64,000 nucleotides of DNA from Oikopleura dioica (lineage: Eukaryota; Animalia; Chordata). Where the stretch lies: contig OU015568.1 of NCBI GenBank assembly GCA_907165135.1, forward strand, positions 11,532,001 to 11,596,000, read 5' to 3'. The translations under genes and the position numbers were made by a program. Shown in pieces: positions 32,901 through 45,900 of this stretch (its first letter is position 1; each line of letters starts with the position of its first letter). The notes under the pieces are model-generated. The model had not been told where the DNA came from. It saw nothing but the letters and a program-made list of their open reading frames with translations, and searched no databases.

Positions 32901-33938
32901 CGCGGAATGAAAACAACCGTTATAAAGGGATGAGCTAAGAGATAAGACACGCGGAATGATATCAGGCCGCGCAATGTGAGTTGGACTCCCCATATTTCTG
33001 AGATAGTTTGCGACTCCTGGTCAATTTTGGGTTCCATATCAATCGTTTTAAAATAGAAGTAGAGCCTATGAACTAAATTTATTGCGTCCATCTCAGCAAA
33101 TAAGATCTTTTGTCAGTAGGGATCTCCTTTCCGAGGCGATTATGTTCGGTGACGATATGATGACTGGAGCATTGAGGGTTGAAAGGAGATCGTTTTCTAC
33201 GAATTAATCTGCTCCCTCATCGCATTATCCAGCGGGTCATTTGCTTAGATAGGAAGTTCTTGAATTTAACCCGCTCTCTCTAAGAGTTCGATACGTGCTA
33301 TTTTTACTGCTAGTTATTTTAGTTTAACGCATTAGAAAATAAATCCTACTTTGTTATTGTTGTAAAGTGGTCCCACGATGGCACGAACGCGTGATATGTT
33401 GTAATATTTACAAAATTAGAGCCTCGCGACATGAACAATGTTTAATTATGGCATCACAATCAAATCCTTTCTAATCTACTCTGGAATCGACTGCCTCATT
33501 CTCTAAGCAACCGGAAAGAATGTTGGATAGGCTCTCAATCGTTGGTCTTGTTTTTTGAATAAGCAAGGTACCATTATTGCTTTCATATTTTTAATTCAAA
33601 AAGTCAAGAGAGACCAGTCACTTCGTGCATGCTCTGTACTTTTCTAAAGTCAAAGTTCAATTTCTTAAACTTTTCATCTGCACTCTTTGAATTAACCAGA
33701 GTTCATGTGTGCTTAAAACTATTGAGAGTACTGTATCATTTTATATGCTAGAGAAATAAACAAAAGTATAATTATAAAGATCAGTTTATTGGTTCTATTT
33801 ACTCGAATCTAGTTCAAAATGAAAGAACATCTCGGTCATTACAGTCATTCGTTCAGTGAAATAATTGCAAGTGTTTTCTTATTCTTCGCCTTGATTCCGG
33901 AGGTCTTCTCTGCGTGTTGCTCTCCCTTTTTCATTTGT

Positions 33939-34763
33939 TTACCACAGAGTCACAAAGTTTCCATTTCCATCGAATATGATTTTCTTTTGTAAAAACTTGT
34001 CCAGCTGGAAAACAAATTTTCCCTGGAGATTCGGAAAGTGCTTTCTGATAGTATCTGCTAGAAAGCTTTCCAAGTCTTCGAAGAGAAGTAGATCAGCGTT
34101 TTCAGAATAGCTTGAAAACAACTTCCGCATTTCGTCTTTTTCATCGCAAGCGGCCAAATACAGCGTGATCAAAAAGCTCAATAAGGATGGAAACTTCTTC
34201 TCGATCAAATCGCAGAATCTTGAATCGTCGATTCGCCGAGATCGAAGTAGATTGCGGTGAAAATCCTCGCCAATTTCATAAATGTGCGAGTGGTGGTTAC
34301 GGAAGAATCGGATGAAGCTGACGAGTGTTGAATCATATTTCTCCAGCGAAAAGTCGTACATTTGCCACATTGAATGTTTGTCCCAGGCTGGAGTTTGGTG
34401 TCGACCCATTTGAGTAGAGCAAAATGTGATCTTCTTGACAAGTTTCTCATCGGAAAGAAGCATCTTAACGATTTGGAATCGCTTCGCTCGCGGGTGCTCG
34501 TACTCTTCGTTGATTTCAATATTCACCAACTCTGCGTGTAAGTTGTGGAGACATTTCATCTTGAGCATCGGGACGAGTTTGTTGTTGAAAGCGCATTTAC
34601 TGTCTCTTGAAAGCAGCTCTTCGATGATGTCCACCCGAGAAAATGTATTTGAATCTGTGCTATGCAAACTGAAGACGTCGAACGAGACAGTTTTCGTGTC
34701 TTTGGTAAGTCTCTTTGGGACTACTTTCGCTGACTTCTCTTCAACAGATGCGTTTTTCTTCAT
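33939..34763 (-). CDS. Intronless 274-aa protein with a KEN (IRE1/RNase L-type) ribonuclease-like domain, paralogue 1
   Basis: Single ORF; probable start MKKNASVEEK at 34763. Contains KYDSTLVSFIRFFRNHHSHIYE...FCDLIEKKFPSLLSFLITLY. R-X4-H codons at 34301-34284. AATAAA at ~33785-33790. Confidence 0.8.
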   Translation of the reverse strand: MKKNASVEEKSAKVVPKRLTKDTKTVSFDVFSLHSTDSNTFSRVDIIEELLSRDSKCAFNNKLVPMLKMKCLHNLHAELVNIEINEEYEHPRAKRFQIVKMLLSDEKLVKKITFCSTQMGRHQTPAWDKHSMWQMYDFSLEKYDSTLVSFIRFFRNHHSHIYEIGEDFHRNLLRSRRIDDSRFCDLIEKKFPSLLSFLITLYLAACDEKDEMRKLFSSYSENADLLLFEDLESFLADTIRKHFPNLQGKFVFQLDKFLQKKIIFDGNGNFVTLW

Positions 34764-35300
34764 TGTTTGAAAAAATATTTTGTTCTGCTTTTTAGTAAAC
34801 TCAAAATTTGGAATGACAAAAATCGACATTCATCGAGCGACGCGCTCTGAAAAAAGGGAAAAGGAGCCCGCGGGGCGCTCGAGTAATGGATTTGTAGGGG
34901 TGAGTAAGAGCGATCGAATATGTCGAAGAAAACGACAATTTAGATATTCTTTGACTGCAAAGAAAGGATAAATAATTCGATTTTATTGAAAAAATCAGTT
35001 TATTAGATGAGTAATCAAAAGTTTTACAGTTCAGCTTGCAAATTTACGAAGGTACGAATATCTGTGTTGCAACACTAGTAATTTCTTGTTCGTAACTTCT
35101 TCTTATAGAGATCGTGTGGTCAGATTCGCATTTCTTTCAGTTTACCAATAAGCGGTATAAGTTTGTGTGAATTGTAATTCGTTCAAACTTCCATATCTTG
35201 ATGTTATCGTATCCATATTCATATCCAAGGTCGTTTCCTGGCCAGTTTCATTATCCGTGGTCGTTTTCAGATCATATGTTTCAAGCTCAATAAAATCGGG

Positions 35301-36122
35301 CTATCGAAGAGTCAAAAAATTTCCTTTTTTGTCGTAAATGATTTTCCGATGCAGGTATTGATCCAGCTGTCGTAAAAACTTTCCTTGAAAATTAGGAAAA
35401 TTTTTGGTAATCGTCTCGGAGAGAAAACTTTCAAGATCTTCGAGCAAGAGTAAATCCGCGTTTTCAGAGTACATTGAAGACAGTCGGCGCATTTCATCTT
35501 TTTCGTCACAAGCAGCCAAATAGAGAGTGATGAGGAAATTCATCATTGAGGGAAAATTTGTCTCGACGAATTTACAGAATCTTGATCGGTCAAGTCGATG
35601 GGAACGTATCATGTCAGCTTGAAAATCAGCAGTTGTTTGGTAGAAGTGTTGGTCATGGTTTCGAAGAAAACGGAGGAAGTCGAAAAGTGTGCTTTTATAT
35701 TTTTCTGTTATCGCAAAGTTGTAGTTATTCCAGACAGGATGCATATTCCAAGCAGTAATGGATCTCTTCGGAATCTGTTGCATAGAGCAACCGAGTGTTA
35801 TTTTCTTTACAAAAATTTCTTCTGAAAGCAGCATTTTAAGTACGCGAAAGCGTTTTGCTCTTTCATCAGTGTATTCTTCTTCGATGTCAATGTTGTCCAA
35901 CTCGGCGTGAAAGTTTCTTAGGCACTCCATTTTGATAACCGGCACCATTCTACAAGAGGAATCGGGGGAACTTAGTAGAGTCTCGACAATATCAGGAGAG
36001 TTGAAGGTATTCAGGTCATTGCTGTGTAAGCTAAACACATCGAATGCGGTCGTCTTCGTATCTTTAGTAAGCCTTGTCACTGGTTTCTCTTTGAATTTTT
36101 CTTTTGGAACTTTTTTCGGCAT
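35301..36122 (-). CDS. Intronless 273-aa protein with a KEN ribonuclease-like domain, paralogue 2
   Basis: Single ORF; probable start MPKKVPKEK at 36122. Contains KYKSTLFDFLRFLRNHDQHFYQ...FCKFVETNFPSMMNFLITLY. R-X4-H codons at 35663-35646. Colinear with paralogue 1 over its full length, including an identical FLITLYLAACDEKDEMR. Confidence 0.8.
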   Translation of the reverse strand: MPKKVPKEKFKEKPVTRLTKDTKTTAFDVFSLHSNDLNTFNSPDIVETLLSSPDSSCRMVPVIKMECLRNFHAELDNIDIEEEYTDERAKRFRVLKMLLSEEIFVKKITLGCSMQQIPKRSITAWNMHPVWNNYNFAITEKYKSTLFDFLRFLRNHDQHFYQTTADFQADMIRSHRLDRSRFCKFVETNFPSMMNFLITLYLAACDEKDEMRRLSSMYSENADLLLLEDLESFLSETITKNFPNFQGKFLRQLDQYLHRKIIYDKKGNFLTLR

Positions 36123-36516
36123 TTCGAAATTTTGTGCGCTTGAATATTCGGGGTTATATTCTTTTTGTTTCCAAAATTTTGTGATGATGAAGTCGAGCAG
36201 AGAGCGTTTATATTGATAAAAGGGAAAGAGAGCCCACGTCTTGCTCGTCATCGTTTTTATGGAGGGCTGTCTGAGCTTTGCGCCTAATCAAGCTCTCACC
36301 ATAATGACAAAGCAATTCAAATACAGAAGCAGTAAAGTCAGCCTGCGAAAGGAAAGAATTTCTGTCTTTGCTACATACATTCAATTTGAAAGGAAAGCGT
36401 GATGACTTTGATGTTTGGATAGACACAAGTTTATTGACATTTCATACGAATAAAGATCGATCTGACTGAATCGACTTCTGATGCAGCGATGACTGTGAAC
36501 ATTCAACTAGAAAATG

Positions 36517-39500
36517 CTAGAAGTTTTTCATGTATTCTGCGAAGGATGAAAACTTTTTCTTCTTGATTTTTGCTTGAACGCCGATTGATCTCAGTTTAGT
36601 TTCCTTTCCCGTCTTTTGGTAGCCTATTTCAGGTACATCTGAATTCAGGCGTGAGCAGTTCTTTTTTTTAATCTTTACCTTTCTTAAAGTGAGATGGATA
36701 CTCCCGGTACTTCTCGATCAGCTCGCGTACTGATGGTTCTCTTGAAAATGGTCTGAAAGAGGATAAAAATAATGTCTCTTCGATTAAATTACTGGATCTC
36801 GTTGCATCCTCCACAGCAAAAGTTGTTACTCTTGAGTTTGGCCAAGTTACCGACCATGCTTATTTCCAAACTGCGAAAATTATTGCTAAACAGCTAATTA
36901 AGCCGCTTTTTTATAAATAACTTCTAATCGATGTTTATTTGCGTCATACTTTTTCTCTCTGCGCACATCTTCTACGCTTCGCGACAAGTTCTGCAGTTGA
37001 AAATTCATTTCCTTTTTATTGATAATATGTTATTGCGTCTTTTTTCTTTTCCGAATACCTTCATCTTATTGAGGATTTGCTTAGAAAAGACCGACTCGGA
37101 GTACAACTTGTCGGAATTAATTGGCGGTGGTGTTGATACTAAACTTTCCGATCGGGACAAGCTGTCAATTGTGCCGCGAAGAAGGTCTATCATCAGCTTG
37201 AAAATAGATCCATAAGTAAGTTAACTTAGCATTCAGTCGCTAAAGCAAATGCTTTCAAGCTTCAATTTTTAACCGTAACAATTTCTTGATCCTTGATTTC
37301 AATTTTTCGCTTTTTGCGAGTTCAATAATTTTTCTGATCGAAATTATGATCGAAAGTTTCTGTATGAACTCTGGCTCAAATTGATGAATCTTGTCGTGGT
37401 ATGCAGTCAACATGTCGTTCTTTGCGATCATGATCTCTTTCTCAAGCTTTTCGATGTCGGAAAATGTATCTGACTGAGGACTAGTTGGAGTTGTGTAAGT
37501 TGAAGTTGCAGAATCGATGGAGTTCATGTGACTTGATACTTTTTCAGAAGTCTAATTAGTTTCTGACGGGTATATTGCTGAGGCACCTTCGGGTGTCAGA
37601 TATTCAGCGAATCTGTCATTAGGATATTGCCAATTTGATAAAAGAAAATTAGAATTCCGTTACTGTTATTCGGGGGTCTTTATCTTCTTATTTCTCTTCT
37701 GTTCCATTTTCTTCTGAAATTTCTCCTCAAATGTTTCATTTTCCGTAATTGGTAGTGGACCATCTTTCCTCAAAGAATTCTTCCAGATATCCTGCGGATT
37801 CAAGACGTCTTTCGGAGCCATGCTGCCTCTTCGCGAACTTCCCAAAATCTCGGATTTGCGTCTCTCACTCAACTATCAACTGTTAAAGCTGGTGTTGCTC
37901 TAGCTGTTCTCAGTACCTTCTGAGTGCTCTGAATCTCAAGCTTGAGCGTTTTTATGCCCGTCGAGCTTTTCGAAAGAAGCGTTTTTTTCGCCGTCGGGCT
38001 CAGCATCATGCCAGTGGCGGAAATTTCATATTCACATGCACCTGCTACCTTGAAACGCTGCTATAATTGCTAGTAATGTTTTATGCAGTGACTATTCGCG
38101 TGCCAAGATCAGATGATCCGAAGATCAGCTAATTCTGATGATAGATTTTTTCGATTTTAAAGATTATTATCTGTATTGAAAATTATGGAAAAGAATAAAT
38201 AAGTAAAAGGGCTTGCAGTAATATTCGAAGAAAAATTAAATAATTCAAATATGGGGTCGCCTTCGCTGACTTGAAATTGGCAATCGTTTATCATCATCCG
38301 TGCACCAGAAATTGTCGAAATTATTTTCCGGATAACGAGGCTCCCACTGGCTGCCATCGAGGGATGGAGAGGGAGGCTGGCGGAGCAGATCAGAATCATT
38401 CAGTCGGTTGAACTTGGCTCGTTCGATCAAATCTTTCAAGGGTTGAAAACAGTCTAAAATATCGAAATTTTTCAAAAGAATAAATTTCATTCTGAATCAA
38501 TAATAATAGTTTCAGCTGAACCCTCTCCGAAATTTATCTTTTCGTTGATCCTCTTTCCTTGCGTGTCCACTGGAATATTTCCAACAAATCGCTGCTTCTT
38601 TTTCTGCGCCATTTCGTTTTCCTCTGTGTCGGAATCTTCTCTTTTTGGCGTCTGACTTGCTCCTCCGAAAAGCAGTTCTTCGCCCGTAACGTCGTTCTTT
38701 GAGTAGCTCGGCTTTGGAGAAACCGAGCGAGATCGTGACTTGGAACTTGCTCTGTAGATTTTGGACGTTTGACACATTGTCTCGTCGTCGTCACTTATCA
38801 TCGATTTCAAGTCGGCTTTGCTCCTAGTTTTATATTTTCAAATAACGAGGAAACAAATTTGAAAGTACCTTGACTGCCGAGCTGGTTTAGGACTAGCAGC
38901 GTGTTTGCGTTTCTTTGAGTTTTCCTGCACATTCTTGAGCCAGTTTCCTAGCCGACTGTCCATTCCATTCGCAGTTGCTGGCGACGGGTTCATCAAATGT
39001 TGAGTATCAGTTTGGTTCCCAGTTTTGTGGAGCAAGGAAATTTGCGTCATGTCATCGTCTTCGGACGAGTCGATTAATTCGATGTCATCTAGCGGCGAGT
39101 ACAAAATATTCAGTGGAGCCGACTTTTCTGGAGTAACTTTGGAGGACTTTTTGATGAAGTGTTGGGAGATGTCTTGAGTTTTCTCTTTGGAAGATTGGCG
39201 AGAACGACTTGCAGAGGGCTTATTAATCGAATTTCAGGTCATACTAATTATCTTTCTAGCATCTTCTGCCCAAATGTTCCACCCTGCTTTCTAGTAGAAG
39301 CCCTTCCTAGAATAGACTGATCTTCTGTCCGCCTGTGAACGAGATTTCTTCGGAACAGGTAATGTTTCTTTGGGCTTTAGATTGAGCAGTTTCGACGCTA
39401 CCATCTGATTTCCATTTGAACTTGTACTGATATTTCTGCTGGGTTTTTCATCCGTTTTCAGGATTTTCTTCGAACGAGATGAAATTTTCGCGCTGGAGAG

Positions 39501-42945: not shown

Positions 42946-45900
42946 ATGATGGATTTAAAACCACTAGATTTGTCGGAAATCGCGACGGTTGAAGAACTAC
43001 AGCGACGTAGAGAAGATATTACCAATAAGGTAATGTTGTAAAGACTGCGCTCGGCAACCTGTGTAGAATATCTGAGTCAGGGATCAGTTTTGATATAAAA
43101 ATAAGAATGAGGGGCGAAGCGGCTTATCTCAAAATGACATTTTGATTTATCTTTTAAACTGATTCAGGATCCCGACTCAGGCTTTTGTACAGGTTCGAGA
43201 ACCAAACAGAAACGTATTGAAACTTTCAAACGGGAGTATTAAAAATACTTCTTTCTTTGCGTACCCCGTCATTACTTCCCAGATCCCGCTGATTCTTATT
43301 TCTGAGTCGCTTTGTTTCAAAGTCAAATTGGGTCTATCAACATTTGCTTTAGTATGACGGTTTTATGGACGCTCTCAAAAAACGCCGCTCGCACTTGCAA
43401 CAAGCTCTCAAATTCGGATACTGGCAAAAAGACGCCGCTGAATTGAAAAAGCTGCTCGAGGATCATCTCGCATTGGCAAGGGCCGAGCATGTTGGCCAAA
43501 CAGCGGCTGGTTTCGCTGCGCTGGGCGACTTGGAAACGGACAAAAAAGCGAATAAGGCCGGTCTTGATCGACTCATTGAATCTGGCAAGGGAATGATCGA
43601 AGAAGATCATTTTGCGAAAAGCGAAATTCAACGAACGATTGATGGCCTTCTCGATCTCATGACTCGACTTGAACAGGCGCTTGTCGAGAAGCGAATGAAG
43701 TTAGAATTGCAGCAGCGTATCGATGAGTTCCGAAGTCAACTTAGAAATATGTCGGTTTGGATTGCAGAAAAGCTACCCGCCGCGGAGAGCGATAACTATG
43801 GCTCGACGCTGGAGGAAGTCGTTGCGCTGCAGGCCTCGCTCGTCCGGCTCGATAATGAAGTTAATGGTAAGTTTCTCAAAGGTCAACTCACTGCGTGAGG
43901 CAGAAAGAGTTAATTACCCCCACTTATCTTTTTAATTGTCACATTCCTTATTCTTAATTGTAATTTTAGCCTCCGAATCAATTCTTACCAAACTGCACGA
44001 AGAATCCAAGGAGCTGGAAATCGAAGCCGAGTTTCAAGAAATCCGAAGCGAGTGGAGCACTCTCCGCGAAAAACTTTCTGAACGACGCGAGAAACTGCTT
44101 AAATCTCTCGCAAAGCATAAGTTTTTGGAAGAATGCGAGCATCTGACAAAGTTCATCGTCATTCGACGGGATCAAGTCGACTCCGTGGAGATTTCTACGT
44201 CTATTACAGAGTGCGAGCAGTTTTTGCGGAATAACAATCGAGCTTCCCAGGAAGTTAAGGCGAATCAAATCAGAATTGATGCTCTCCAATCGCAGCTAGA
44301 ATCGATCGACTCTGACGAGTGCAAAGAATCATTCGATGCCGTTGAGAAAAAATGGCAGGATCTTCTTGAATCCCTCGAGCGACAAGCCAAAATGCTCCGA
44401 AAAGAGCTTCGAAATCTCAAGTTCGAGGATCAAGTCCGAAGCTACTCGAAATGGGCAACCGAGACGATCGAATCTGTCAAATCTGTCAATCACCCTAAGG
44501 ACGAAAATGAGCTCGACAGCATCTTGGAAATTTTTGAATCGCAAAAGGAAGATGCTGAGTCGCGACGAGCGCTGTACGAGTTTTTGATTGCCGAAGCAGC
44601 AGAAATTGGCGATGAGTCGAAAGAGCAAGAGCTAAAAGAACTCAACGCTGAATTAGTTGGCGTTATTGCGGAGAAAAAGGAGCTCTATTCTGATGCAAGG
44701 GATTACTTCAAATTCACAAATGACGGCGAGGGCGAACTCGTGTGGATCAATAAAGCTAAAGAGCAATGGCAAACTCTTTCTTCCCAGAAACTTGACTCGA
44801 TTGCCGAAGCGGAAAAGGCACTAGCTGAGCAAAAACGTAATAAAACATCTCTTTATTCAATTGATTATCAATAGTTTAGTCCTCACTTCTGAACTGGAGG
44901 CTCGTGAGCCACGAGTAAAGCAGCTTTTGGCTTTGAAAATAAAATTCGAAGAAGAAAAGGCTGATAATCTAAAGGAGCAGGTTTATATCGGCACATATCG
45001 TTTGTATCAAGATTTTTCACAGACCTATTTTTATCAAAGTTTCCCTTCCTGGTAAAAATCCCTTGGCCTTTTTTGATAGACAGCACTGACTTCTTTGAAC
45101 CTTTTGTTATTCGAATAATACGATCACGTGATTATTTATTAAAAAGGTCAAATTCTAGTTCTGAGATTTCCAAAATTTCTCTAAAAAATGCCCGAAGTTC
45201 GATTTTTTGGGAATGAGACCCTAACCAAGTTCGTGATGACTAGGTTCGTGGGACTAGGTTCGTGATGAGTTCTGCCAGAGAATTGAAATCGGGCTATATT
45301 TTAGGGCAGTAAGGGAAATGGGTTGATGACTAGGTTCGTGGAACTAGGTTCGTGAGTTTTTATAAAGTAAAGATTTAACAAGGAAAGGGTTCGTGGGACG
45401 AGGTTCTCTGAGTTTTTGAACAAGCAAAATGTAGGATTTTATATCCCAAATGAGCCTAGTCTTCACGAACCTAGTCGCACGAACCTAGTCATCAACCCAT
45501 TTCCTTTACTGACCGAAAATGGTGAAGATACAAAAAACACATGTAAAAATCCAAATTTCACGAACCTAGTCTCACGAACCTAGTCTTCACGAACCAAGTC
45601 TTCACGAACCAAGTCTTCACGAACCTAGTCCCACGAACCTAGTCACACGAACCATTTTTTCCAACATGGCACCCACGAACCTAGTCCAACGAACCTAGTC
45701 CTCACGATCCTGGTCATCGGTCTCGATTTTTTTTTCGGAAATCTCCGGAATTGTGCGATTCGAAACTTTTTCGGATCACTCCGAAATCTCCGGAATTGTG
45801 CGTTCTGGAATTGTGCGTAAGGACTGTAAATCAAAACATAAAGTGAGCTTATTGGCTTATAAAATTATTTACTCGACCCCCCCTCTGAGCGTAATTTTAT

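What the first reader, a model, noticed from the sequence alone, without database searches (positions are those of the whole stretch)
33939..36122. Tandem pair of kinase-less KEN (IRE1/RNase L-type) ribonuclease-like genes
Seen: two colinear single-exon ORFs (274 and 273 aa), both containing KY.ST...F.RF.RNHxxH.Y......F...(I/V)E..FPS(L/M)..FL. Established: the KEN nuclease of IRE1 (recalled as SVRDLLRAMRNKKHHYRE...YFTSRFPHLL) and RNase L (VGDLLKFIRNLGEHIDE...YFQKTFPDLV) has this layout and belongs to the HEPN superfamily with an R-X4-H catalytic motif. In those proteins KEN sits behind a (pseudo)kinase that controls dimerisation. Here RNHHSH and RNHDQH are retained despite substantial divergence between the paralogues, only ~130 aa precede the domain, and I see no kinase motifs, no ankyrin repeats and no transmembrane segment. 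Inference: a stand-alone, differently regulated HEPN/KEN endoribonuclease family, possibly antiviral, anti-transposon or stress-related. HEPN active sites form at dimer interfaces, so the two neighbours could heterodimerise.
Basis: partly seen in the sequence, partly recalled or inferred. Interest (0 to 1): 0.85.

Follow-up and report, generated by a model that had tools for sequence, protein, structure and literature searches.

The report
Two kinase-less KEN ribonuclease genes

Summary
Two minus-strand ORFs, g1 (33939-34763, 274 aa) and g2 (35301-36122, 273 aa), are 57% identical paralogues. Their synonymous sites are saturated and amino-acid change is constrained.

Three lines of evidence support KEN homology:
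- All ten close family members hit Pfam Ribonuc_2-5A.
- A 26%-identical relative of the same length, UniProt E4Y442 of Oikopleura dioica, hits it at 42.7 bits and matches yeast Ire1 in the PDB at E 4e-5.
- In an exhaustive fold search, the AlphaFold model (pLDDT 75) ranks the yeast Ire1 KEN domain first (Z 9.0, 133 residues) and RNase L second (Z 6.7). The next match scores 4.6.

The Ire1 catalytic residues Tyr, Arg-Asn and His (R-N-x3-H) are invariant in the close family.

There is no kinase. The KEN fold starts at about residue 57. The upstream same-strand gene ends with a conserved stop and its own AATAAA. No kinase-bearing protein appeared among 1.84 billion representatives.

This is not new. 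Anantharaman et al. [quoted passage not shown] This scan also noted other stand-alone KEN genes elsewhere in this genome.

Two details are possibly new: a conserved C-terminal tail of about 55 aa with weak EF-hand-like similarity, and a conserved N-terminal peptide. Activity, targets and heterodimerisation were not tested.

The parts
33939..34763 (-). g1: intronless CDS, 274 aa, stand-alone KEN protein (stop codon included)
   Evidence: ORF. It is the window's own protein P0003. Pfam PF06479 scores 21.7 bits, E 2.3e-4, just under the 23.3-bit gathering score. The orthologue on L004 is 72% identical.
35301..36122 (-). g2: intronless CDS, 273 aa, stand-alone KEN protein (stop codon included)
   Evidence: ORF. 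Pfam PF06479 scores 24.3-24.5 bits against a gathering score of 23.3. AlphaFold model m10ceec1f8a59. Contigs of an oligo-dT metatranscriptome cover 35404-36121 colinearly, with no joint.
35472..35954 (-). KEN (kinase-extension nuclease, HEPN-type) domain of g2, residues about 57-217
   Evidence: VIA-align: yeast Ire1 3fbv_A residues 979-1115, Z 9.0, rmsd 3.6 A over 133 residues. RNase L 4o1o_A scores Z 6.7. The next match scores 4.6.
34110..34592 (-). KEN domain of g1, residues about 58-218, placed by alignment to g2
   Evidence: Family alignment and the Pfam hit on residues 156-236 of the 296-aa ORF.
35646..35663 (-). g2 catalytic motif R154-N155-H-D-Q-H159 (R-x4-H); the partner Tyr142 is encoded at 35697-35699
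   Evidence: Invariant columns. The family profile aligns these residues to the yeast Ire1 stretch KYHSSKLMDLLRALRNKYHH. In that stretch Y1043, R1056, N1057 and H1061 are the catalytic residues (PMC3149027).
34284..34301 (-). g1 catalytic motif R155-N156-H-H-S-H160
35304..35471 (-). C-terminal tail of g2 (residues 218-273) beyond the KEN fold: two helices plus a beta hairpin, with weak EF-hand-like similarity
   Evidence: Model pLDDT is 75-92 here. The family profile hits the EF-hand C-lobe of myosin regulatory light chains at E 0.009-0.03. Pfam EF-hand_like matches several members at sub-threshold scores, best 19.9 bits against a cut-off of 21. No fold-search support.
36021..36074 (-). Conserved N-terminal peptide of g2 (RLTKDTKTxxFDVFSLHS, residues 17-34), predicted disordered
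   Evidence: Invariant or near-invariant columns L18, K23, T24, F27, D28, V29, S31, L32, H33, S34. pLDDT is about 50. The motif is absent from the E4Y442 branch.
34999..35004 (-). AATAAA polyadenylation signal about 300 nt after the g2 stop codon (a second one lies at 34982-34987)
   Evidence: Read from the sequence.
33785..33790 (-). AATAAA polyadenylation signal about 150 nt after the g1 stop codon
   Evidence: Read from the sequence.
36430..36519 (-). 3' end of the upstream same-strand neighbour gene: conserved stop codon TAG at 36517-36519 and AATAAA at 36430-36435. This bounds g2 on its 5' side.
   Evidence: tblastx shows the last exon (...KKKFSSFAEYMKNF*) conserved in L002. Sequence. The 36122-36517 spacer does not align between the two lineages.

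Best explanation
g1 and g2 are two old, intronless, independently terminated paralogues of the larvacean stand-alone KEN family. Each encodes a soluble, basic protein of about 32 kDa with three parts: a lysine-rich N-terminus of about 55 residues predicted to be disordered, a complete IRE1/RNase L-type KEN (HEPN) domain, and a helical tail of about 55 residues. Shown here: homology and fold, retention of the Tyr / Arg-Asn / His catalytic set, absence of a kinase, and purifying selection. Inferred: they are metal-independent endoribonucleases that cut single-stranded RNA and leave 2',3'-cyclic phosphate ends. Like every KEN enzyme, they would be active only as dimers or higher oligomers. Because the kinase that drives dimerisation in IRE1 and RNase L is missing, self-association must be intrinsic or supplied by the family-specific N- and C-terminal extensions or by a partner. 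The biological role is unknown. My split is about 45% conflict- or stress-related RNA decay (the published prediction), about 35% a conserved cellular RNA-processing or decay role, and the rest something else.
For: Pfam PF06479 is the top family for all 10 close members. g2 is above the gathering score. The A1 family profile finds O. dioica E4Y442 (P0010) at E 7.6e-39 among 1.84 billion representatives. P0010 itself scores 42.7 bits, E 7e-11, on PF06479 and E 4e-5 against yeast Ire1 in the PDB, with Y...RNxxxH aligned. In the fold search of 48,161 chains, Ire1 KEN scores Z 9.0 and RNase L Z 6.7, the only two matches above Z 5. The poorer first model gave the same two top hits. The Foldseek top ranks are almost all IRE1 or RNase L. 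The nearest ESM Atlas cluster is a 187-aa 'Ribonuclease 2-5A domain-containing protein' cluster, mostly chordate. The catalytic roles of Y1043, R1056, N1057 and H1061 come from PMC3149027, and the equivalent residues are invariant here. No kinase. The E4Y442 gene model has three exons and is also kinase-less. Purifying selection: pN 0.25-0.28 against saturated pS. The prior description and the activity prediction are in PMC3710099.
Against: No enzymatic or dimerisation data exist for any member. g1 alone falls just under the Pfam gathering score (21.7 against 23.3 bits). The model is of medium confidence (pLDDT 75, 18-sequence alignment), and the Foldseek E-values are weak (0.2-3). The Ire1 substrate-binding residue R1039 aligns with Asp in P0010. 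The acidic residue before the motif (D in g2) is S in g1 and Q in P0010. Expression evidence is thin: g2 only, from contigs of one environmental poly(A) library, and nothing for g1. Three RNA runs carrying the species label gave no reads at 95% likeness, probably because they come from a divergent lineage.
Confidence: 0.8

Rival explanations
1. The proteins keep the KEN fold but act as non-catalytic RNA-binding or regulatory subunits. For example, they might modulate the kinase-bearing KEN enzymes encoded elsewhere in this genome by forming mixed dimers.
For: KEN enzymes work through dimer or oligomer interfaces, and this genome is noted to hold several kinase-KEN genes (unchecked notes). The HLE arginine of Ire1 is not conserved. 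HEPN families do include inactive members that serve as RNA receptors (PMC3710099).
Against: All four catalytic residues are invariant in ten close members whose synonymous sites are saturated. That is hard to explain without catalysis.
Confidence: 0.13
2. The two ORFs are 3' exons of a larger gene whose upstream exons encode a kinase, so the 'kinase-less' appearance is an annotation artefact.
For: Larvacean genes have small, sometimes non-canonical introns. Acceptor-like pyrimidine-AG sites lie upstream of both ATGs. No full-length transcript from this lineage could be laid on the region.
Against: The upstream same-strand gene ends in a stop codon conserved across lineages, followed by AATAAA. 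The spacer to g2 is not conserved. An in-frame TGA sits immediately upstream of the g1 ORF. g2 has its own AATAAA before g1. All relatives begin at the equivalent Met. No upstream exon piece matches a kinase in Pfam. No kinase-bearing protein scored E<=0.001 with the family profile.
Confidence: 0.03
3. The pair works as an obligate g1/g2 heterodimer.
For: They are tandem and on the same strand. Both keep active-site residues. The duplication is old and both copies are retained.
Against: On L002 the g2 orthologue has no g1-type gene within 4 kb downstream. On L004 the g1 orthologue has no g2-type gene within 2.8 kb upstream. Adjacency is therefore not conserved. Other subtypes exist (the P0007 and P0008 types).
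Confidence: 0.15

Closest known systems
Stand-alone KEN proteins of Oikopleura dioica ('solo RNase L in Oikopleura', Anantharaman et al. 2013, PMC3710099), e.g. UniProt E4Y442_OIKDI / CBY30440.1
   Same: Same architecture and length (278 against 273/274 aa). KEN-only, with R-N-x3-H retained and a C-terminal extension. Found by the family profile at E 7.6e-39.
   Different: Only 26% identical to g2. E4Y442 has two small introns, whereas g1 and g2 have none. The N-terminal RLTKDTKT..FDVFSLHS peptide and the EF-hand-like wording of the tail are specific to the g1/g2 branch. g1/g2-type sequences were otherwise found only on unnamed marine metagenome contigs.
IRE1 (yeast Ire1, human ERN1/ERN2)
   Same: KEN fold (Z 9.0 over 133 residues), catalytic Tyr, Arg, Asn and His, and the FP(S/N)L motif after the active-site helix.
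   Different: No lumenal sensor, transmembrane segment or kinase. About 18% identity. The helix-loop-element arginine is not conserved. There is an extra tail of about 55 aa after the KEN domain.
RNase L
   Same: KEN fold (Z 6.7 over 118 residues). Soluble cytosolic-type protein.
   Different: No ankyrin repeats or pseudokinase, so no 2-5A sensing module. No RNase L chain matched by sequence at E<=10, whereas 16 IRE1 sequences did. By these measures the family sits nearer IRE1 than RNase L, despite the 'solo RNase L' label in the 2013 table.
Kinase-less KEN expansion in monocot plants (PMC3710099)
   Same: An independent case of the KEN domain freed from its kinase and multiplied.
   Different: Separate origin according to the paper. 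Not examined here.

Membership tests
KEN domain (Pfam PF06479 Ribonuc_2-5A), HEPN superfamily | Profile match at or above the curated gathering score | tested here: met
   g2 scores 24.3-24.5 bits against 23.3. g1 scores 21.7 bits, just under. All 10 close members match at E<=1, best 6.9e-6. Branch relatives P0010 and P0012 score 42.7 and 32.7 bits.
KEN domain (Pfam PF06479 Ribonuc_2-5A), HEPN superfamily | All-helical KEN fold superposable on solved IRE1/RNase L KEN domains | tested here: met
   Predicted model only. 3fbv_A scores Z 9.0, rmsd 3.6 A, 133 residues. 4o1o_A scores Z 6.7. The next best match scores 4.6.
KEN domain (Pfam PF06479 Ribonuc_2-5A), HEPN superfamily | R-x4-6-H motif with a polar residue after R, plus the upstream catalytic Tyr | tested here: met
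   Y142, R154, N155 and H159 (g2 numbering) are invariant. They align to Ire1 Y1043, R1056, N1057 and H1061.
KEN domain (Pfam PF06479 Ribonuc_2-5A), HEPN superfamily | Metal-independent endoRNase activity that depends on dimerisation | not testable with these tools
   Needs biochemistry. Multimer modelling was not available.
IRE1 orthologues | Lumenal sensor, transmembrane segment and active kinase N-terminal to the KEN domain | tested here: not met
   No hydrophobic segment and no kinase motifs. No Pfam kinase hit. Only about 55 residues precede the KEN fold.
RNase L | Ankyrin repeats and pseudokinase N-terminal to the KEN domain (2-5A sensing) | tested here: not met
   No ankyrin or Pkinase hits. 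Protein length is 273/274 aa.
Oikopleura stand-alone KEN expansion (PMC3710099) | KEN domain without a kinase, in a larvacean, with detectable homology to the O. dioica solo KEN proteins | tested here: met
   The profile hits E4Y442 at E 7.6e-39. The scan's figures for this genome (934 windows of 64 kb, on 17 pieces) and a GA..AG intron fit an Oikopleura-type genome, but the species itself is not disclosed.
EF-hand pair (for the C-terminal tail) | Significant profile match, and a 12-residue Ca2+-binding loop with Gly at position 6 and Glu/Asp at position 12 | tested here: inconclusive
   Myosin RLC C-lobe hits at E 0.009-0.03. PF09279 scores at most 19.9 bits against a cut-off of 21. Read by eye, the loop-equivalent SENADLLLLEDL lacks Gly6 and the position-12 acid, and the second loop ends the protein, so canonical Ca2+ binding is unlikely. 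No fold-search support.

The most novel reading that the evidence does not exclude
In this branch the kinase has been functionally replaced by family-specific add-ons: the conserved, disordered N-terminal peptide and the EF-hand-like C-terminal tail. These would gate KEN dimerisation through a partner protein, a ligand or g1/g2 pairing. That would be a mode of switching on a KEN ribonuclease not known from IRE1 or RNase L.
Probability: 0.12. Interest if true: 0.6.

Novelty: new member of a known kind. Interest (0 to 1): 0.33.

Why it matters
IRE1 and RNase L are the only studied KEN ribonucleases, and in both the nuclease is switched on by a kinase-type domain. Natural kinase-free KEN proteins ask how the nuclease is kept in check without that switch, and what RNA it cuts. 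This pair provides two well-defined, compact, intronless examples. They have intact active sites, mapped domain limits and candidate regulatory extensions, so they are ready for expression and assay. The concept itself has been in the literature since 2013, so the value is as material for experiments rather than as a discovery.

Tried and rejected
- HSF-type winged-helix reading of the tail. A single-sequence PDB search gave HSF2 DNA-binding domains at E 0.2. The match disappeared with both family profiles, which prefer EF-hand lobes, and the E4Y442 branch lacks the FVRQL-like wording. Rejected.
- First AlphaFold model (10 sequences, pLDDT 60). Foldseek found nothing significant. The model was superseded by the 18-sequence one.
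- RNA runs carrying the species label (X7-X9). No reads at 95% likeness, apart from a 32-nt pile-up at 38713-38744 with loose ends on both sides. They probably come from a divergent lineage, so they say nothing about expression.
- The second word-index search, with alignment A2, added no new members.
- ESM Atlas feature search on the tail alone: no usable hit.
- Rfam over the whole window: nothing.
- Repeat search around the pair: no direct or inverted repeats of 25 nt or more. The duplication therefore left no nucleotide-level trace.
- dN/dS could not be computed because synonymous sites are saturated.
Full report
**What is there.**
- g1 runs 34763->33939 and is 274 aa from MKKNAS. An ATG further upstream, at 34829, extends the ORF to 296 aa, and an in-frame TGA sits directly before that ATG.
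- g2 runs 36122->35301 and is 273 aa from MPKKVP. Its longest ORF reaches 36251.
- The two proteins are 57% identical, E 2e-104. A tblastn of the window finds no third copy.
- Nei-Gojobori counts give pS 0.78-0.88, which is saturated, against pN 0.25-0.28. This holds for g1/g2 and for each against a related contig gene. The duplicates are therefore old and under purifying selection.
- Both proteins are basic (pI 8.5) and about 32 kDa. Neither has a transmembrane-grade hydrophobic stretch or any kinase motif.

**Is it a KEN domain?** Yes, on three independent lines.
- *Profiles.* Pfam Ribonuc_2-5A (PF06479) is the top family for both proteins. g2 scores 24.3 bits against a gathering score of 23.3, and g1 scores 21.7. 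All ten close family members match it.
- *A transitive link.* A profile of the close family was searched against 1.84 billion representative proteins. It found only 11 proteins at E<=0.001. One is P0010 (E 7.6e-39), a 278-aa protein of the same architecture but only 26% identical to g2. P0010 scores 42.7 bits (E 7e-11) on PF06479 over profile positions 39-125 of 127. It also matches yeast Ire1 chains in the PDB at E 4e-5.
- *Fold.* The second AlphaFold model was built on an 18-sequence alignment and has mean pLDDT 75 and pTM 0.71. It was aligned to all 48,161 PDB cluster representatives. Yeast Ire1 residues 979-1115, which is the KEN domain, came first with Z 9.0 and rmsd 3.6 A over 133 residues (model residues 57-217). 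RNase L came second with Z 6.7, and nothing else exceeded 4.6. The poorer first model had already given the same two top hits. Foldseek's top ranks are almost all IRE1 or RNase L chains, though with weak E-values of 0.2-3. The nearest ESM Atlas cluster is a 187-aa, mostly chordate 'Ribonuclease 2-5A domain-containing protein' cluster.

**Active site.** Korennykh et al. (PMC3149027) define the roles of the yeast Ire1 residues. H1061 and Y1043 form the acid/base pair, and R1056 and N1057 hold the scissile phosphate. The HMMER alignments place the family's Y...R-N-x3-H on exactly these residues. In g2 they are Y142, R154, N155 and H159. In g1 they are Y143, R155, N156 and H160. All are invariant in the ten close members.
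- More distant fragments (P0015, P0017) have R-D-x3-H.
- Not everything is kept. The RNA-binding arginine R1039 of the Ire1 helix-loop element aligns with Asp in P0010. The acidic residue three helical positions before the motif varies: D in g2, S in g1, Q in P0010.

**Is it truly kinase-less?** The KEN fold begins at about residue 57.
- Upstream of g2 on the same strand lies a multi-exon gene. Its last exon ends ...KKKFSSFAEYMKNF-stop at 36517-36519 and is followed by AATAAA at 36430-36435.
- That exon and its stop codon are conserved upstream of the g2 orthologue on a related metagenome contig, L002. The 395-nt spacer to the g2 ATG does not align between the two.
- None of the upstream exon pieces matches a kinase or any other Pfam family at a meaningful level.
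- g2 has AATAAA signals at 34999-35004 and 34982-34987, about 220-240 nt before the g1 ATG. g1 has one at 33785-33790. Each gene therefore looks like its own unit.
- All relatives start at the equivalent Met. The annotated O. dioica gene for P0010 has three exons and is also kinase-less.
- No kinase-bearing protein reached E<=0.001 with the family profile.
- Transcript evidence is limited. Contigs of one environmental oligo-dT metatranscriptome cover g2 from 35404 to 36121 at 96-99.5% identity without any joint. The same library shows a spliced contig of a neighbouring gene, so it does contain processed RNA of this organism. Of the nine listed differences in g2, five are synonymous and none is a stop. 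g1 was not seen in that library. Three bulk RNA runs carrying the species label gave nothing at 95% likeness, most likely because they come from a divergent lineage.

**Is it new?** No.
- Anantharaman, Makarova, Burroughs, Koonin and Aravind (2013; PMC3710099) list 'solo RNase L in Oikopleura' in their HEPN table. [quoted passage not shown] They infer that these are catalytically active defensive endoRNases.
- P0010 is CBY30440.1, UniProt E4Y442_OIKDI, and is already named 'KEN domain-containing protein'.
- In the paper library, no other paper mentioning Oikopleura also named a KEN domain, RNase L or IRE1 among the 15 top-ranked of 267 hits.
- The species of the window is not disclosed. The scan's own figures for this genome (934 windows of 64 kb, on 17 pieces), a GA..AG-type intron and the family membership all fit an Oikopleura-type genome.
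- Earlier notes of this scan list further stand-alone KEN genes and kinase-KEN fusions elsewhere in the same genome. I did not check these.
- One nuance to the published label: by sequence the family matches 16 IRE1 chains and no RNase L chain, and by fold it is nearer Ire1 (Z 9.0 against 6.7). These measures do not support 'solo RNase L' as a statement of origin.

**What may be new in detail.**
- *The C-terminal tail.* The last 55 residues or so lie beyond the KEN fold. The model shows two helices and a hairpin there, with pLDDT 75-92. The family profile hits the EF-hand C-lobe of myosin regulatory light chains at E 0.009-0.03. Pfam EF-hand_like matches several members just under its cut-off. 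Read by eye, the loop-equivalents lack the canonical Gly6 and the acid at position 12, and the second loop ends the protein. The fold searches give no support. I rate an EF-hand-like tail at about 40%, and Ca2+ binding as unlikely. An HSF-like match seen with the single sequence did not survive the profile searches.
- *The N-terminal peptide.* The motif RLTKDTKTxxFDVFSLHS (residues 17-34) is nearly invariant in the close branch yet is predicted to be disordered. That pattern is typical of a binding motif.
- *Family structure.* g1 groups with P0004-P0006 and related contigs (support 94/100). g2, P0001, P0002 and P0007 are unresolved, and P0008 forms a further group. P0002 is the syntenic orthologue of g2.
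- *Rate of change.* g2 and P0002 are 58% identical, while the neighbour's exons are 58-81% identical. The KEN gene is therefore not evolving conspicuously faster than its neighbour, which gives no sign of an arms race.
- *Adjacency.* The tandem arrangement is not seen on the two related contigs long enough to tell. This gives the heterodimer idea no support.

**Mechanism.**
- *Shown:* a complete KEN fold, an intact catalytic set, no kinase, and purifying selection.
- *Inferred from IRE1/RNase L biochemistry:* metal-independent cleavage of RNA that leaves 2',3'-cyclic phosphate, with activity requiring two or more KEN domains side by side.
- *Open:* what brings the domains together without a kinase, what restrains the enzyme, and which RNAs are cut.

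**Verdict.** Its kind is already known. It is of moderate interest, as uncharacterised material for experiments.

Noticed in passing
L002:1-103 and L002:3160-3262 (related metagenome contig; corresponds to window 38045-38124): A perfect 103-nt inverted repeat flanks the 3-kb block that holds the upstream neighbour gene and the g2 orthologue. That block is inverted relative to the next gene block when compared with the window, where the sequence occurs once and no inverted repeat exists. This is either a real inversion between lineages or an assembly fold-back. A JGI contig (L003) shares the same start.
   Followed up: partly
window 36517-38124 (minus strand): The upstream neighbour is a multi-exon gene conserved at about 70% nucleotide identity with L002. 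It has no Pfam match and ends ...KKKFSSFAEYMKNF. Its function is unknown.
   Followed up: partly
window 38433-38527: A metatranscriptome contig skips 95 nt whose ends read CT..TC on the plus strand, which is GA..AG on the coding (minus) strand. This is a non-canonical intron of the type common in Oikopleura.
   Followed up: no
window 38713-38744: In three RNA runs carrying the species label, 32-40 reads match only this 32-nt piece. They show a fixed A>C at 38730 and consistent unrelated sequence on both sides. This may be a conserved exon fragment of a divergent lineage or a related locus. It is unexplained.
   Followed up: no
window 43365-44874 (plus strand): Long ORFs there have a heptad-rich, spectrin-repeat-like look by eye. 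No tool was run on them.
   Followed up: no
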